Source of the DNA: Saccostrea echinata
Taxonomy: Eukaryota
Length of the DNA stretch: 64,000 nucleotides
Direction: 5' to 3'
NCBI RefSeq assembly: GCF_033153115.1
Contig: NW_026889771.1
Span: 14,880,001 to 14,944,000, forward strand
The position numbers were made by a program, and so were the translations under genes. How positions within the stretch are numbered: position 1 is the stretch's first letter; each line of letters starts with the position of its first letter. Below, one piece after another: positions 31,203-61,642 of the stretch. The notes beneath the pieces were generated by a model, which had not been told where the DNA came from, ran no database searches, and saw only the letters and a list, made by a program, of their open reading frames with translations.

Positions 31203-32908
31203 ATGGCCCTGTCCAAACCAGATATACAAGGAACGGCCCAGCATTTTTTAGAGTGTGGCGTTGAAGAATGTGAGAGAAACTGTGAATTTTACTGCAATCC
31301 TTGCCACCAACAGATGTGTAAACAATGTAGAGATGAACATCTGAGAAGTCCAGAAACAAAAACCCATGAGGTGGTCCTATACCAACTACGGAAGCGACAA
31401 CTTCCAGTAAAGAAATGCAAGATACATCCCACCAAGGATATAGATCTTCTCTGTGAAGAATGTAAAATTCCTTTATGTTCCAAGTGTGCTGCTACTGAAG
31501 AACATCGAGGTCATGTCTTCACTGATTTAGAGCTTATTTATGCAGAGAAGTTCTCATTCTGTCTTGAAGAAATTACTAAACTGAGGGAGTGTTTTGTGCC
31601 ATCTTCTGAAGATGTACAGAGAGAAATTAAAGAAGATGTCATGGGAATCAAGAAGATCATGGACAACTTAAGAACCTCGATGAAATCTGAAGCAGAGTCC
31701 CTAAAAAGTCTGGTAGATACAGTGGTCTGTGAGAACATGAAGCAGCTAGAACAGATAGAGAACTCGCTGCTAGAGGATTTAAAAACCCAAGATAAGACTC
31801 TTAATGATTACACTATTTATCTAAACAATCTAATTAAAGAGCTCCATGGATTCCTCTCTTCACCAGATCCAACAAAATTAACGCTTTCTTTGGTGGATAT
31901 GAAAATCAAACCGATACCAGAGACGACAAAACCAGTAACACCAGTATTTTCTTCTGGTCAATATGGCAAAGAGGATGTTGTTAAATTACTGGGTAAAATA
32001 AGTATTCCAGAGATAAAACCAAAAACACGAAAAATAAAGACTATGGAAATTCTATCCAACCTATCAGAAAAGAAACTTACAAATATTCAACCTTTCCCTG
32101 TCACTGAAGTCAGGGAGCTCTACGTCCCGGGTCTTAGATTCAAAACATCCCACCTATCGCTAGACCAGTCAGGCAGACTCTGGGTCAGTGATAATGAGAC
32201 TGGTTGCCTTGTCCAGATAGATCTACAGGGGAATCGTCTACAAACAATACACACCAGTGGTGGATCTGGTTACCACACAGTGACACAGGACGGAGATCTG
32301 ATCTTTACAGACCATTACAAGAAAGTTATCAATAGAGTAACAATGGATAACAGAACCACAAAAATGATTAAAACAAAAGACTGGGAACCTTGGAGCATAT
32401 ACTCGTCCAACATCACCGAGGACATACTTGCTGGGATGGTAAAGGGCAAAGTTGCTAAAGTCACCAGGTACAACAAGACAGGGAAAGAATTACAGAACAT
32501 ACAGAGGGATAACAAAGGACAGGAACTGTATAGTGATCCGCATTACATTACAGAAAACATCAATGGAGATATCTGTACATCAGACTATGATAAAAAGGCT
32601 GTAGTGGTGGTCGATAAATCAGGACAACACAGATTCTCCTACACAGGTCAGGGGTCAACAACGTTCTCCTTCACAGGTCAGAAGTCAGATTTCCGACCCT
32701 TTGGAATCTGTACTGATGTTCGCGGTCGCATTCTGGTGTGTGATCAGTACACTATTCTCCTCCTTGATCAGGACGGTCAGTTCTTATCTTCACTACTCGA
32801 ACCAAATATGAAATTGTACCCCTTAGTGTGTGTGTGGATGATGAGAATAATCTTTATCTTGGGAGAAATCTTGTGCCAGTAGTGACAGTTTACAAGTATC
32901 TTCAGTGA
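31203..32908 (+). CDS. RING-less TRIM-like protein (B-box, B-box, coiled coil, NHL propeller), copy 1; 1-nt frameshift near the C-terminus
   Basis: CGVEECERNCEFYCNPCHQQMCKQCRDEH and CKIHPTKDIDLLCEECKIPLCSKCAATEEHRGH B-boxes, heptad region, and NHL repeats (xPxGICTD, PHYITEN, ICTSD). The ORF ends at 32882, but the paralogous end [11 protein letters not shown]...YKYLQ* (TGA 32906-32908) is restored by adding 1 nt at the C run 32819-32822. Confidence 0.85.
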
Positions 32909-34037
32909 TTCTAATTCTTCAGATCTAACGAAGATAAGCACATCATTATTTATGGTTAACAATGGTTTGAATTACAGATTTCATTTTGTGTAGCTTTTGT
33001 TTTTTAATAATTATCATACGTAAGCTTCAAAATTTTCAGATTCTCTTATCAGATTAGCATTTCTCATTAGATAGACTACAAGATAATATCAAAATTTCCT
33101 ATTATGCAAAGGTCACTAGTAGGTTCAAATGCAACTTTTTTTTGTTACTTTGTATAGAAAATATTTCAAAATAAAAATTGCAAAAAACATTTATCTAATC
33201 CGTCTGGAAAACAAGATATTCACACAGTCAAGTAAAAAGGCAAGTTTTCGCCAGTGATTGTATAATTATATATATATATAATATAACAGAACGAAGATCA
33301 AAACTCTACCGGTTTTAATATTAATCGGCGTTCTGTTATAGTCCCCTACCGGTCAGTCCCCAATATCAAATAGCTTTTGTTTACAATTAAAAAAAAAACA
33401 TTGTTGAGTATATAATTTTGTTCATTTCGACTTTGCTTTCAAATAAGATGTCAGTGTCCTGTATGATGGACTCTATAGGTTCTAGACATCTTTGTTCGCT
33501 TTTTTAAACAAAACACCAATATTAGCTAGTCTTCCAATCTTTAAAATCACTTTTAATTCATATCCATTAAAATTTATTAGGCTCTATTAGGGCCAAATAT
33601 ATAGTTTAATTTATAATTAAAATGTTTAGAAAATAAGGTATTGTGTAAGTTATGGACATAAATATTATACAAACATTTTCATCACTGTTTTTGTAACTAA
33701 ATATCGTTGAGATGATAACCATCTTGAAGCGAATGTGAAGCAGTGAAAGGGTCTTATAGAGAACTTTAGGTGGAGCGAACTTTTATAATCGGGGGAAAAA
33801 AATGAAAAAGGACTCTTCTTCTTTTTAAATAAAAATAATTACGAGAAAGAAGAAGAAGACCATTTCTGCAAATTTTAGTTAAATTTTGAGTTAATGATCA
33901 CCATAATTAAGTGGCTAAATATATTCACCTCCTCCATGAAGTTTACACAAATTGTGTCATTTTACGTGCTTCCTATATTCACCCTTGATCAAGGTATTCT
34001 GTTGGTGAAACGTAAGCCACACTTGTCCAAGGACGGA

Positions 34038-34072
<35 letters not shown>
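34038..34072. repeat. (TA)n microsatellite
   Basis: Directly visible. Confidence 0.9.
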
Positions 34073-58495: not shown

Positions 58496-60422
58496 GTCTT
58501 GCATATTCATATTGACATCACAAGGGGTAATTAATTGTATAATAATTACTAAAGACAAAGTCTGCTAACCTTTTAAAGACCAACTCATTGGTTTTTTTCC
58601 TATTTAATTTTTTTTCCTATTTATGTACAATTGTTCATTGTGAGATGTATTTTTATTTGATATGATGTTTAAGGTCCTGTCTTAAATGTACTCAATATTG
58701 TCCGTAACACAATTTCTATTTTTAAAACTCTCATCATTCTCTTGTACAACTCAAATTTGTACCTGATTTCTGACATTAATGTTAAAATGTGTAAATTGCA
58801 TGACAGTGACAATAAATCTACCTCCAATACCTTTTCGAACTTAGAAGTATTCTTAAAGAAAAAAAAAGATAAATGCATGTATGTAAGTGACAGCTTTATT
58901 CTATGCAATGCAAGTTCACTAGTAGAATAGTTCCTGAATCACTCTACTACCCTATGCAAACAAGCAGGGCAAACAGTATACGTAAGGTGATAAAAAAAAT
59001 GCATAGTATTAATAACACTAACAAATCTTTTCAAAACCTTTCAAACTTTTCTGCACTTAAGACAGATAACATAAAATTTCACACAAAATTTGGCCAGCTA
59101 GGCATGATTATGATCTGAATTACAATTTATTAACAACTTCTGAAAAATAAAAATAAGGAATTATGTCTTTCGTAAGTTGAACTGCAAAGTAATTGGTACT
59201 GCGGTTTCTCATATGAGCTGTCAAGGGAGATTACAGGCTTACAAGAATATTACAAGTATTGGATGAGATTTACTGAAGAAATTTAAGAAACTAAGTTTAA
59301 TGTCATTTTCTTAACAATTTAAAAAAAAAATCATTTGATTTTTTTTGCATAGACTTTTGACAGACTATGTTTGCTGGCTTTTGTTTCAACATTAAAACAT
59401 ATACTTTAGTCCTCAATTAGTATTATTTTTCATATATGGTAAAATTGGTGTAACCAAAGGACACAGGTAGTACTGGCTGGTCCACAGCTAAGCAGGACAA
59501 CCTTATATAAGCCTCATAATTATATTAGGGAGGTCCTCCAAAGAGGACATAGATGTATCCCTGAGGAATATTTATTGTTTATTGTAAAAATCTGCACTAA
59601 GAAGGGGACAATAAGGCTTTATTTAAATTTATTCAAACCTGCTTTTTTGCTACCCTTGGAAATCCTTTATTGTATAAATGTATACAACATTGGCTTTCTG
59701 ACTTTGTGAATGTATTATGTTCTCAATTTTCAAAATTAATTACAACATTCATGCAGTATCCATAAAATATATCTTGAACTTCATTTGACTTGCTTCAAAC
59801 ACTTTGCATCATTCATCAAAGAACATGTGTTATTCAAACTTGTCCAATGGAACAAAATATACACTCCAGTTAATGATTTTTCAAAAAGGTATGCTTTATC
59901 TCTTGGATCAAAACTTGATTATTTTGTTAAATCATGCTTAACTCAATGGCAAATCATTCTCAAGAAAGAGAGGCTGTCAGTTTTTCCCTTCCAGAATTTT
60001 TACTCATTGGGAGGCCACTAATTCCCCATCTGTGGAAGGGTGCAAATTCAGACCTGTATGTGGTACTTACAGCTTCTGATTAGTGAGATGGCACAGTACC
60101 TCCATTTATAAATATGTTCTCATTATTATGATTGCCCCGTGTAAGCGATTAACAAAGGAAGACAAAAAGTGTTCTTGGTAATGATTTAGACTTCATCTTC
60201 AACGTAGAAAATCAAATTAAGATCACTAGGGGGTATAAAAAAAACTCTTGTTCAAGAGCAGAAATTATATGCTCATGACAAAAATATTAGAGATCTGCTT
60301 CTACCAGATCCTGGAGGTTTGGTGTCACTGCACACCTGTCATTCAAGACTCAATGGCACTTATATTGTAAAACATTTGCCAGATTTGCTCAAAGGGAGAG
60401 AAAATATATTCAGGACAAGGAA

Positions 60423-61642
60423 TTAAAAGTCTGGTGGATGAAGTGGTCTCTGAGAACATGAAGCAGCTAGACCAGATAGAGCACTCACTGCTGGAAGATT
60501 TAAAAGCTCAAGATAAAACTTTTAATGATTACATCGCCTATCTAAACAACCTAATTAAGGAGTTTCAGGAATTCCTCTCCTCACCAGATCCAACAAAATT
60601 AACTCTGACACTCTCTTTGGTAGACATGGAAATCCAACCAATACCAGAGTCGACAAAACCGGTATCACCAGTATTTACTGCTGGTCAATATGGCAAAGAG
60701 GATGTTGTTAAATTACTGGGTAAAATAAGTATTCCAGAGATAAAACCAGAAAGAAGGAATATAAAGCCAATGGATATTCCATCTAGTCTAACACCAAAGA
60801 AACCTACAGGTAAACAGTTAAAATCTGACAAAAGGAAATTTAATGTGAAACAAACACTGTCTCTATCTTCCTCTGTCACTGAGGTCAGGGAGTTCACAGT
60901 ACCAGGTGTTGACGATCTATTCCATATATCAATAGATCAGTCAGACAGACTCTGGGGCAGTGATAATGATGGTAACCTTGTCCAAACAGATCTAGAGGGG
61001 AGTCAGTTACAGAAGATAGTAACCAGTGGTGAATTTGGATACCACACAGTGACACAGGACGGGGATCTGATCTTTACAGACACAGACAACAAAGTCATAA
61101 ATAGGGTAACTCTGGATATTAATATCACTAAATTCATTAAAACAGGAGATTGGGCACCAATCAGCATACACTCTTCCCACATCAATGGGGACATACTGGT
61201 GGGGATGAGGAAGGGTAGAGAGGCTAAATTGACCAGGTACAGCAAGACAGGGAAAGAACTACAGAACATAGAAAGGGATAACAAAGGACAGAGACTGTAT
61301 AGTGACCCATACTACATAACAGAAAACATCAATGGAGATATCTGTACATCAGAGAATGAAAAGGCAGTAGTGGTGGTGAATAAATCAGGACAGCACAGAT
61401 TCTTCTACAAAGGTCAGGGGTCAGTGTTCCATCCCTTAGGAATCTGTATTGATGTCCTTGGTCACATATTAGTGTGTGATCTGTACAATGTTCACCTCCT
61501 TGATCAGGATGGTCAGTTTTTATCTCTACTAATCACACGAGAAACAGGGATTTATCCTATCAGTGTATGTATGGATGATGAGAACAATCTTTATGAAGGA
61601 GATGTCGATGCCAGAGTTATAATGTACAAGTATCTTCAGTGA
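60423..61642 (+). pseudogene. 5'-truncated TRIM-like copy 5 (second half of coiled coil plus full NHL propeller; open 402-codon frame)
   Basis: Homology to the paralogues begins abruptly at ttaaaagtctggtggat. Promoter, first exon and B-boxes are absent. It ends YKYLQ* with a 3' flank homologous to copy 3. Confidence 0.85.

What the first reader, a model, noticed from the sequence alone, without database searches (positions are those of the whole stretch)
31203..61642. Tandem RING-less TRIM-NHL array diversified at predicted ligand-binding top-face positions: candidate variable-receptor system
Across the five paralogues the framework stretches are nearly invariant (GYHTVTQ, YITENINGDICTSD, GQHRFSY, GICTD). 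Residues flanking the blade proline and following the blade Asp vary strongly between copies: W-EPW/RPL/APF/IPL/API; YS-DPH/LPH/RPH/SPY/DPY; F-RPF/CPF/SPF/SPY/HPL; SD-NET/LG/LG/MD/ND; TD-HY/KD/LY/MY/TD; CD-QY/KF/DH/NH/LY; GM-VKGKV/IFNAE/MNSGK/VKVDK/RKGRE; terminal G-RNL/ADN/PNF/ACY/DVD. In NHL propellers (Brat, TRIM71) such loops form the top binding face (established). Family expansion in bivalves is known, but a face-restricted diversifying repertoire with birth-and-death copies suggests intracellular pattern-recognition or restriction factors lacking their own E3 RING (inference).
Basis: partly seen in the sequence, partly recalled or inferred. Interest (0 to 1): 0.75.

Follow-up and report, generated by a model that had tools for sequence, protein, structure and literature searches.

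The report
Oyster NHL-propeller genes with hypervariable face
This oyster window holds five tandem copies (two intact, three broken) of a very large family of RING-less B-box/coiled-coil/NHL-propeller genes in which only the known ligand-binding face of the propeller changes faster than neutral, the signature of a recognition repertoire whose targets are still unknown.

Summary
Five + strand, single-ORF B-box1/B-box2/coiled-coil/NHL genes lie at 31203-61642: two are intact (c2, c3) and three are broken or truncated (c1, c4, c5).

They belong to an oyster family with at least 83 loci in this genome.
- The d-a and b-c loops, which form the 'top' RNA-binding face of Brat NHL, have omega 1.66, significantly above 1.
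- Bottom loops have omega 0.34, strands 0.46 and B-boxes 0.23.
- M8 versus M7 gives an LRT of 630, with 12.7% of NHL codons at omega about 4.2.
- Of the 31 selected sites, 24 are in top loops, 7 are on adjoining strand ends and 0 are on the bottom face.
- Tree-free pair counts and per-blade trees agree.

New here: the N-terminal and NHL halves have discordant genealogies. Synonymous divergence drops sharply at codon ~309, so modules are exchanged or the NHL framework is homogenised.

No RING is present. The top-face charge is not uniformly positive, so the ligand class is open. An immune role is inference only.

The scan reached the same reading earlier on another piece of this genome (s1-810050). 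No paper in the searched library describes it.

The parts
31203..32905 (+). Copy c1: B-box1/B-box2/coiled-coil/NHL gene. A 1-nt deletion near 32811 shifts the frame in the blade 5-6 region. The ORF 31203-32882 (559 aa) ends in about 20 aberrant residues. There is also a 30-nt insertion in the d4-a5 top loop at 32661.
35884..37608 (+). Copy c2: intact 574-aa gene, 70% identical to c3.
45663..47381 (+). Copy c3: intact 572-aa gene and the reference for all numbering. B-boxes are codons 1-107 (45663-45983), coiled coil 108-253 (45984-46421), disordered linker 254-316 (46422-46610) and six-bladed NHL propeller 317-572 (46611-47378).
46650..47345 (+). Span in c3 that holds the 31 codons with M8 posterior above 0.9. 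These are c3 residues 330, 332, 347, 348, 370, 386, 387, 410, 412, 428-431, 433, 456, 459, 460, 462, 477, 478, 480, 501, 503, 505, 520, 521, 542, 544, one inserted column after 544, 546 and 561. All lie in d-a or b-c loops or on the strand ends touching them.
52722..54426 (+). Copy c4: pseudogene. It has a 1-nt insertion near 53173, a 2-nt deletion near 54307, a 10-nt deletion near 54335 and in-frame TAG stops.
60413..61642 (+). Copy c5: 5'-truncated copy. It lacks both B-boxes and the first part of the coiled coil. The open frame runs from 60434 and is 402 aa.
60128..60426 (+). Repeat abutting the truncation point of c5. It is 80% identical to 40171-40476, so a dispersed element probably replaced the 5' part of c5.

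Best explanation
The five genes are local members of a large, oyster-specific, mostly intronless family. This genome has at least 83 loci, in clusters on several contigs. The architecture is B-box1, B-box2, a TRIM-type antiparallel coiled coil, a disordered linker and a six-bladed NHL propeller, with no RING and no filamin domain.

Shown: the zinc-binding and coiled-coil module and the propeller framework are under purifying selection. About 30 residues in the d-a and b-c loops change faster than synonymous sites. Those loops form the 'top' face through which Brat and LIN-41 NHL domains bind their ligands. Indels are also concentrated in those loops.

Shown: the N-terminal and NHL halves have different genealogies, with a sharp step in synonymous divergence at the domain boundary.

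Inferred mechanism: each protein dimerises through the coiled coil, possibly assembles further through its B-boxes, and presents two variable NHL faces. Each paralogue therefore recognises a different, fast-evolving ligand. New specificities arise by point substitution under diversifying selection, and gene conversion or module exchange recombines them with N-terminal modules. Having no RING, the proteins would act by sequestration, by repression as Brat does, or through RING-bearing partners.

The most likely biological role is an intracellular recognition repertoire for non-self or selfish nucleic acid or protein, such as viruses or transposons. This last step is inference only.
For: Architecture and fold.
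- Pfam B-box hits.
- The profile of 44 paralogues hits TRIM2 NHL (E 1.4e-20), TRIM3, TRIM71, Brat and Thin, and the TRIM5, KAP1 and TRIM25 B-box/coiled coil.
- The AF2 model has 24 strands, i.e. 6 x 4, over residues 317-570 with block pLDDT mostly about 90 (82-96), and long helices at 108-164 and 170-218.
- Foldseek gives TM 0.80 and E 7e-16 to TRIM2 NHL.

Face definition. The b-c and d-a loops are the top, RNA-binding surface (PMC4015489, passages). The first strand is the outer strand of blade 6 (PMC5908797, passages).

Selection, on 37 paralogues and 564 codons.
- My likelihood code reproduces the IQ-TREE M0 lnL of -26549.956.
- M2a versus M1a gives LRT 461. Of 21 sites at P>0.95, 20 are in the NHL domain.
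- Partition omega is 1.66 for top loops (LRT against 1 = 31.7, p 1.8e-8), 0.34 bottom, 0.46 strands, 0.23 B-box, 0.35 coiled coil and 0.57 linker.
- On the NHL-only tree, M2a-M1a LRT is 539 and M8-M7 LRT is 630, with 12.7% of codons at omega 4.2.
- Of 31 sites at P>0.9, 24 of 67 top-loop codons are selected against 0 of 55 bottom-loop codons (Fisher p 6.5e-8). The other 7 are strand residues next to top loops.
- Each of six blade-sized segments, on its own tree, gives LRT 17.8-94.9. All 28 sites at P>0.95 are on the top side.
- Ten sister pairs give top Nd 320 and Sd 52, dN/dS 1.67 (binomial p 8.7e-4), against 0.19 for bottom loops.
- Over all 666 pairs, top dN over NHL dS has median 1.22 and exceeds 1 in 451 pairs. 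Bottom loops exceed 1 in 0 of 666 and strands in 2 of 666. The youngest pairs (dS<0.1, n=54) have median 2.95.
- Selected columns have 0-1 gaps among 37 sequences, except one column with 4 and one with 2. They are enriched in Y, R, E, W and F.

Indels. Insertions relative to c3 fall mainly in top loops, including all of 4 or more residues.

Module discordance.
- Searches show it. For example, L007 versus L010 differ by 19-43% per 25-codon window up to codon 308, then by 1-13%.
- AU tests reject each half's tree on the other half's data (p 4e-58 and 5e-61).

Expression hint. Contigs of four runs cover the c3 coding region at 45957-47331, but none of the 1.8 kb upstream.
Against: - Within the five window copies alone, top-loop dN/dS is 0.85, not above 1. 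Three of the five are broken.
- NHL synonymous divergence is 2 to more than 10 times lower than N-terminal divergence in many pairs. If that reflected constraint on synonymous sites rather than recent shared ancestry, top-class omega measured against N-terminal dS would fall below 1. Only the strongest sites would then remain above 1.
- Recombination between paralogues is demonstrated, and it inflates the nominal p-values of site-model LRTs.
- The site models were fitted with branch lengths fixed to M0 proportions plus one scale factor. They used naive empirical Bayes and 8 beta classes.
- A four-gamete, PHI-like test found no distance dependence inside the NHL region (p 0.99). Conversion tracts within the NHL are therefore not shown.
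- Net charge of the top loops averages -0.5, with range -11 to +5. This is unlike the electropositive top face reported for RNA-binding TRIM-NHL proteins, so RNA binding is not supported by this crude count.
- There are no data on ligand, induction, protein expression or presence/absence among individuals. The runs are only guessed to be RNA and are kept as contigs.
Confidence: 0.72

Rival explanations
1. Relaxed constraint only. The top-face loops are dispensable surface loops that drift neutrally in redundant paralogues, so there is no adaptive diversification and no receptor function.
For: The family is highly redundant and many copies decay: 3 of 5 in the window and 14 of 83 genome matches with stops. 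Within the window, top-loop dN/dS is 0.85, close to neutral. Top loops of any propeller tolerate change better than the tight bottom turns.
Against: Top-loop omega is significantly above 1 (1.66, p 1.8e-8). The site class sits at omega about 4. The youngest pairs have a median top omega of 2.95. The disordered linker, the natural neutral comparator, has omega 0.57. Sixteen top-loop columns are at least 90% conserved, so the face is not unconstrained. The intact copies keep all zinc ligands, and B-box omega is 0.23.
Confidence: 0.08
2. Artefact. The apparent omega above 1 comes from gene conversion or recombination, from misaligned loops, or from depressed synonymous rates in the NHL-coding half, and not from positive selection.
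For: The two gene halves have conflicting trees. NHL pS is far below N-terminal pS. Recent duplicates with N-terminal pS of 0.01 show NHL pS of 0.09, so some differences are imported from other copies. Recombination inflates site-model LRTs.
Against: Tree-free pairwise counts give the same answer. Each blade on its own tree gives it too. Synonymous change in top-loop codons equals that in strand codons (3.45 against 3.43 per codon; pS 0.129 against 0.114), so the loops are not old islands that escaped conversion. Selected columns have 0-1 gaps and often sit between invariant residues such as W409 and P411. NHL synonymous sites do saturate against distant paralogues (pS 0.60-0.73). The N-terminal to NHL pS ratio varies from 0.1 to more than 10, which speaks against an intrinsic constraint. 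Artefacts would not select one face and spare the other (0 of 55 bottom codons).
Confidence: 0.1
3. Diversified endogenous regulators. The paralogues are Brat/LIN-41-like post-transcriptional repressors whose top faces have diverged to bind different host or transposon RNAs, for instance in germline or development. The driver would be internal conflict or sub-functionalisation rather than pathogens.
For: The architecture is that of RING-less Brat (recalled). The top face is the RNA-binding face in Brat and LIN-41. PMC5908797 stresses evolutionary plasticity of NHL RNA recognition (abstract and passages). Selected sites are enriched in Arg, Tyr, Trp and Phe, which suit RNA as well as protein.
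Against: Top-face net charge is about neutral on average and reaches -11, against the electropositive faces reported for RNA-binding TRIM-NHL proteins. A scale of at least 83 loci with a high pseudogene fraction is typical of conflict-driven repertoires. In Crassostrea gigas, 'TRIM' genes are prominent among genes that differ between virus-resistant and susceptible families and among resistance-associated loci (PMC6971885 and PMC9437489, passages). Those papers do not say which TRIM subtype is involved.
Confidence: 0.2

Closest known systems
Drosophila Brat / C. elegans NCL-1 (RING-less B-box1-B-box2-coiled-coil-NHL proteins; the architecture is recalled, from no call)
   Same: Same domain order without a RING. 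The six-bladed NHL has its first strand closing blade 6. The ligand-binding top face is formed by the b-c and d-a loops.
   Different: Brat is a conserved single-copy developmental repressor with a conserved, electropositive RNA-binding top face. Here there are at least 83 loci. The top face is the fastest-evolving part and its net charge ranges from -11 to +5. Sequence identity to solved NHL domains is only 17-21%.
Vertebrate class VII TRIM-NHL proteins (TRIM2, TRIM3, TRIM71/LIN-41, TRIM32)
   Same: These are the best sequence and fold matches for the propeller: TRIM2 NHL at E 1.4e-20 and TM 0.80. They share the B-box2 and TRIM coiled coil. Database names for the family are 'TRIM2-like', 'TRIM3-like' and 'TRIM71-like'.
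   Different: There is no RING. There is no filamin domain: no such Pfam hit, and residues 254-316 are modelled as disordered. The genes are intronless and massively expanded, and the binding face is under positive rather than purifying selection.
TRIM5alpha/TRIM22 in primates and finTRIM/btr in fish (B30.2/SPRY variable loops under positive selection; recalled, from no call)
   Same: Same evolutionary logic. A conserved B-box/coiled-coil scaffold carries a C-terminal recognition domain whose surface loops are under diversifying selection. In fish there is also tandem expansion with pseudogenes.
   Different: The recognition module here is an NHL beta-propeller, not B30.2/SPRY. There is no RING, so no autonomous E3 activity. 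The NHL and N-terminal modules show discordant genealogies.
The 'TRIM' multigene family reported in oyster antiviral transcriptomics and resistance scans
   Same: Same host group. TRIM genes are among the most represented families in genes that differ between oyster families resistant and susceptible to Pacific oyster mortality syndrome (PMC6971885, passages). They also appear among loci associated with OsHV-1 survival (PMC9437489, passages).
   Different: In the passages read, those papers treat TRIMs as a name list. They give no domain subtype, no NHL face analysis and no selection tests. Whether their genes belong to this B-box/NHL family sits in supplementary tables that I could not see.

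Membership tests
TRIM/RBCC family | N-terminal RING finger | tested here: not met
   No C3HC4-type pattern occurs in any of the six frames of the 64 kb window. An in-frame stop lies directly before the ATG in c1, c2 and c4. The start Met and the following QHF motif are largely conserved across the paralogues. 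None of the 120 listed homologues has a RING Pfam domain.
TRIM/RBCC family | B-box zinc finger(s) | tested here: met
   PF00643 hits at E 5e-11 to 6e-12, with two stretches in c1, c3 and c4. The Cys/His ligands are invariant across 44 paralogues.
TRIM/RBCC family | Coiled coil after the B-box | tested here: met
   AF2 helices at 108-164 and 170-218. The profile aligns to the B-box/coiled-coil structures of TRIM5 (E 5e-15), KAP1 and TRIM25.
TRIM-NHL (class VII) | C-terminal six-bladed NHL beta-propeller | tested here: met
   24 strands with block pLDDT mostly about 90 (82-96). Foldseek gives TM 0.74-0.81 to TRIM2, TRIM3, Thin, TRIM71 and Brat NHL. HMM hits at E 1e-20 to 4e-12.
TRIM-NHL (class VII) | Filamin/ABP280 repeat between coiled coil and NHL (present in TRIM2/3/71, absent in TRIM32 and Brat; recalled) | tested here: not met
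   No filamin Pfam hit at E<=0.1. Residues 254-316 are modelled without structure, with pLDDT below 50 over 285-314.
Brat-like RNA-binding NHL proteins | Electropositive top surface that binds RNA | tested here: inconclusive
   A crude charge count over top-loop columns gives mean -0.5 and range -11 to +5 in 37 paralogues. The bottom face is -8.9, as in Brat. No electrostatics on coordinates and no binding assay were possible.
Diversifying innate recognition repertoires (TRIM5/finTRIM-type logic) | omega above 1 concentrated on the ligand-binding surface of the recognition domain | tested here: met
Diversifying innate recognition repertoires (TRIM5/finTRIM-type logic) | Tandem expansion with gene loss or pseudogenes | tested here: met
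   Five copies lie in 30 kb and three are broken. The genome has at least 83 matches in clusters, 14 of them with stops.
Diversifying innate recognition repertoires (TRIM5/finTRIM-type logic) | Binding of, or restriction of, a pathogen; induction on infection | not testable with these tools
   The only expression hint is that contigs from runs guessed to be RNA cover the c3 coding region.

The most novel reading that the evidence does not exclude
Oysters carry a germline-encoded 'variable-face' receptor system built on an NHL propeller. It comprises dozens to hundreds of RING-less B-box/coiled-coil scaffolds. The propeller framework is kept uniform by exchange between paralogues. About 30 top-face residues and loop lengths are driven apart by diversifying selection, and whole NHL modules are recombined with different N-terminal modules. 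This would be a propeller-based counterpart of TRIM5/finTRIM, acting as an intracellular restriction or sensing repertoire against viruses such as ostreid herpesvirus or against transposons.
Probability: 0.35. Interest if true: 0.85.

Novelty: new variant of a known kind. Interest (0 to 1): 0.68.

Why it matters
Bivalves have no adaptive immunity and suffer mass mortalities from a herpesvirus. Their expanded 'TRIM' genes recur in resistance studies, but nobody has said what they recognise or how.

The result here makes a concrete prediction. One defined propeller face, of about 30 named positions, is the only part of a family with at least 83 loci that evolves faster than neutral. That face should therefore be the specificity determinant.

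This would extend the idea of a diversified TRIM recognition domain from B30.2/SPRY to the NHL propeller, a domain so far known from conserved developmental RNA regulators. The discordant histories of the two gene halves suggest a way in which such repertoires are remixed.

It also gives oyster breeders and immunologists a tractable set of candidate loci for presence/absence and allele-association tests.

Tried and rejected
- Ancestral-state counting (SLAC-like) was planned, but the machine does not offer ancestral sequences. I used likelihood site models, partition models and pairwise counts instead.
- A PHI-like four-gamete test for conversion tracts inside the NHL region was negative (p 0.99 for all positions and 0.87 for third positions). 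A first version had a counting bug and returned zeros, so I discard it.
- Flank homology between clades A and B, as a test of recent whole-3'-end duplication, gave 0 of 90 pairs upstream and 0 of 90 downstream. It does not separate conversion from constraint.
- Protein distances across species on 117 of the 120 listed homologues gave the same framework to N-terminal ratio (0.43-0.57, bar a single Ostrea pair at 0.93) within and between genera. P0007, P0009 and P0084 were dropped for length or unknown source. This test could not show species-specific homogenisation, and DNA of the other species was not examined.
- Intrinsic synonymous constraint in the NHL half was considered and judged unlikely but is not excluded.
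- Residue-by-residue mapping of Brat and LIN-41 RNA-contact residues onto this family was not done. No tool gave residue alignments to those chains, and I type no sequence from memory.
- Literature: seven searches found no paper on positive selection or top-face variability of oyster or bivalve TRIM-NHL genes.
  - I read passages only of PMC9334734, PMC4015489, PMC5908797, PMC6971885 and PMC9437489.
  - All other papers were seen only as search listings.
  - Supplementary gene lists were not opened. They could show whether the published oyster 'TRIM' candidates are members of this family.
- Two other ORFs in the window (6858-7637 and 21988-23049) have no Pfam hit.
- Rows left out of the counts:
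  - Of 48 fetched loci, 43 ORFs of at least 545 aa plus c3 formed alignment A1. L001 equals c3. L029 (c1), L018, L019 and L038 were dropped as broken or short.
  - The codon analyses used 37 of these 44, leaving out the seven most distant (L042-L048).
  - They used the 564 of 718 columns with at least 80% occupancy.

Full report
WHAT IS THERE.
- The window is G000:C22:14880001-14944000 of a 923 Mb genome in 425 contigs.
- Public sources name near-identical proteins on contigs of the same length as coming from a Saccostrea rock oyster.
- The interval 31203-61642 holds five + strand copies of one gene, each in a single open frame.
- Two copies are intact: c2 (35884-37608, 574 aa) and c3 (45663-47381, 572 aa).
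- c1 has a 1-nt deletion near 32811 that replaces blade 6 with about 20 aberrant residues.
- c4 has three frame-breaking indels and in-frame stops.
- c5 lacks the first ~176 residues, and a dispersed repeat abuts its truncation point.
- Between copies, DNA similarity is essentially confined to the coding region plus a few tens of bases on either side.
- The array continues beyond the window. The next copy, L002, lies 16 kb past its end.
- The genome holds at least 83 matches at E<=1e-20, in clusters on contigs C22, C40, C75, C77, C7 and others. Fourteen of them carry stops. This is a lower bound, because only 76 of 1748 first-look candidates were scored.

WHAT KIND OF PROTEIN.
- Pfam finds two B-boxes and weak NHL-type propeller hits.
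- A profile of 44 intact paralogues (alignment A1) matches the NHL domains of TRIM2 (E 1.4e-20), TRIM3, TRIM71, Brat and Thin. It also matches the B-box/coiled-coil structures of TRIM5, KAP1 and TRIM25.
- The AlphaFold model built on A1 has mean pLDDT 76.8.
  - The propeller (317-572) has block pLDDT mostly about 90 (82-96) and has 24 strands, which is six four-stranded blades.
  - It has two long helices (108-164 and 170-218) and an unstructured linker.
  - Foldseek places it with TRIM2/3, Thin, LIN-41 and Brat NHL, with TM up to 0.81.
- No RING is present.
  - No RING-type pattern occurs in any frame of the window.
  - A stop codon lies directly before the ATG in three copies.
  - The bases before the ATG look like a splice acceptor, so a non-coding 5' exon is likely.
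  - None of the 120 listed homologues carries a RING Pfam domain.
- No filamin domain is present.
- The architecture is therefore that of RING-less Brat-type proteins (architecture recalled). It is not that of TRIM2 or TRIM71, whose names the databases give these genes.
- Among the 120 best of 829 database hits, all named ones are from oysters: Saccostrea, Magallana/Crassostrea and Ostrea.

- By the published definition these loops form the top surface, which is the RNA-binding face of Brat. The first strand closes blade 6 (passages of PMC4015489 and PMC5908797).
- I built a codon alignment of 37 intact paralogues with pairwise dS mostly 0.05-0.65. I wrote a Goldman-Yang likelihood implementation that reproduces the IQ-TREE M0 likelihood exactly.
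- Whole gene: M0 omega is 0.47. M2a beats M1a by 2*dlnL = 461, with 4.6% of codons at omega 4.0. Of 21 sites with posterior above 0.95, 20 lie in the NHL domain.
- Partitioned by structure: top loops (67 codons) have omega 1.66, significantly above 1 (p 1.8e-8). Bottom loops have 0.34, strands 0.46, B-boxes 0.23, coiled coil 0.35 and linker 0.57.
- NHL-only tree: M2a-M1a = 539 and M8-M7 = 630, with 12.7% of codons at omega 4.2.
  - Of 31 sites above 0.9, 24 are top-loop codons and 7 are strand residues next to a top loop.
  - None of the 55 bottom-loop codons is selected (Fisher p 6.5e-8).
- Selected columns are almost gap-free and are often flanked by invariant residues.
- Three controls that do not depend on one tree agree.
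  - Ten independent sister pairs give top Nd 320 and Sd 52, dN/dS 1.67, against 0.19 for bottom loops.
  - Over all 666 pairs, top dN over NHL dS has median 1.22 and exceeds 1 in 451. Bottom loops exceed 1 in 0 pairs and strands in 2. The value rises to 2.95 in the 54 youngest pairs.
  - Each of six blade-sized segments on its own tree gives a significant M2a (LRT 17.8-94.9), with all 28 selected sites on the top side.
- Insertions relative to c3 fall mainly in top loops, including all of 4 or more residues (up to 13 residues in b3-c3 and 8 in d4-a5).
- Inside the window alone the bias is present but weaker. Top dN/dS is 0.85, against 0.36 for bottom loops and 0.42 for strands.

A SECOND, UNEXPECTED PATTERN.
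- Synonymous divergence is not uniform along the gene.
- Take the clade on C75/C77 and the clade on C40 and neighbours. Between them, pS is 0.40-0.86 over codons 1-308 and 0.06-0.19 from codon 309 on, with a sharp step at the start of the propeller.
- Single pairs show the step as well. L007 versus L010 differ by 19-43% per window, then by 1-13%.
- The reverse also occurs. L012/L014 and L008/L009 are 0-1% different through most of the N-terminal half up to about codon 280 (one window at 5%, then 3%), but 3-13% different in the propeller.
- Each half's data reject the other half's tree (AU p 4e-58 and 5e-61). In the NHL tree the two N-terminal clades are intermingled.
- Against distant paralogues, NHL synonymous sites do saturate (pS 0.60-0.73). 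An intrinsic synonymous constraint is therefore unlikely to be the main cause.
- The best reading is repeated exchange or gene conversion of the NHL module among paralogues.
- This is not fully settled.
  - Flanks give no help (0 of 90 pairs).
  - A four-gamete test shows frequent incompatibility (0.29 of site pairs) but no distance dependence within the NHL region.
  - Protein-only comparison across species was uninformative.
- The pattern matters for the selection claim, because omega is measured against local dS. Top-loop codons have the same synonymous change as strand codons, so they are not old islands. If the low NHL dS were due to constraint, however, the class-wide omega would drop below 1.

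LIGAND AND FUNCTION.
- Selected sites are enriched in Tyr (2.9x), Arg (3.3x), Glu (2.5x), Trp (2.1x) and Phe (1.8x) relative to the rest of the propeller.
- Net charge of the top loops is about neutral on average and ranges from -11 to +5. The bottom face is uniformly negative.
- TRIM-NHL RNA binders are described as having electropositive top faces. RNA binding is therefore neither supported nor excluded, and protein ligands are at least as likely.
- Contigs of four small runs, only guessed to be RNA, cover the c3 coding region (45957-47331) with 0-1 differences in the best records. They cover nothing in the 1.8 kb upstream. This fits transcription of an intronless gene but proves neither strand nor level.
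- In Crassostrea gigas, 'TRIM' genes are among the most represented families that differ between families resistant and susceptible to the oyster mortality syndrome. They are also among loci associated with survival of herpesvirus infection (passages). Subtype information would be in supplements that I did not see.

COMPARISON AND NOVELTY.
- The family works like the diversified TRIM restriction or sensor families known from vertebrates (TRIM5alpha and fish finTRIM; recalled). Its variable module is an NHL propeller and it has no RING.
- It fails the RING criterion of TRIM membership and the filamin feature of TRIM2/3/71. It shares Brat's architecture but not Brat's conservation.
- Seven literature searches found no description of face-restricted positive selection in NHL domains or of this oyster family. 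The library lacks most subscription journals.
- Within this scan the same family was already reported from another piece of this genome, with the same reading (s1-810050). I reached it independently before seeing that note.
- Another note (s1-806611) reports RING-less B-box/NHL genes interleaved with cGAS-like genes. I did not check it.
- What this report adds is the status of the five local copies, the tree-free and per-blade controls, the charge analysis and the discordance between modules.

VERDICT.
- The immune function is plausible but unshown.
- I class it as a new variant of a known kind, with interest 0.68.

Noticed in passing
family-wide; in c3 the step lies at about window 46587 (codon ~309): Synonymous divergence between paralogue clades drops abruptly at the linker/NHL boundary, from pS 0.4-0.86 before it to 0.06-0.19 after it. 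Some recent duplicates show the reverse. The two halves reject each other's trees. This implies module exchange or gene conversion with a recurrent boundary.
   Followed up: partly
window 31158-31202, 35839-35883, 45618-45662, 52677-52721: The bases directly before the start codon end in 'tag' or 'ttag' after an AT-rich stretch. In three copies this gives 'tag|ATG', which looks like a splice acceptor. The coding exon is therefore probably preceded by a non-coding 5' exon. A 350-nt block about 1.1 kb upstream of c3 (44232-44607) is 77% identical to one upstream of c4 (51528-51878).
   Followed up: no
window 32661-32690 (c1): A 30-nt insertion duplicates part of the d4-a5 top loop, so the protein reads ...FSYTGQGSTTFSFTGQKSDF.... 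It is an example of top-loop length change by local duplication.
   Followed up: no
window 42780-43504 and 47668-48000: These stretches have high contig depth in all four laid runs, and the contigs run on into unlike sequence. They are probably dispersed repeats or transposon fragments flanking c3. 47674-47836 is also an inverted self-match at 91%.
   Followed up: no
window 21988-23262 and 6858-7637: Two further long ORFs have no Pfam match. The first is Lys/Arg/Ser-rich and is interrupted by the masked N run at 23052-23189, which was left untouched.
   Followed up: partly
alignment A1, c3 residue 124 (window 46032-46034): This is the only non-NHL codon with posterior above 0.95 for omega above 1 in the whole-gene M2a fit. 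It lies early in the coiled coil.
   Followed up: no
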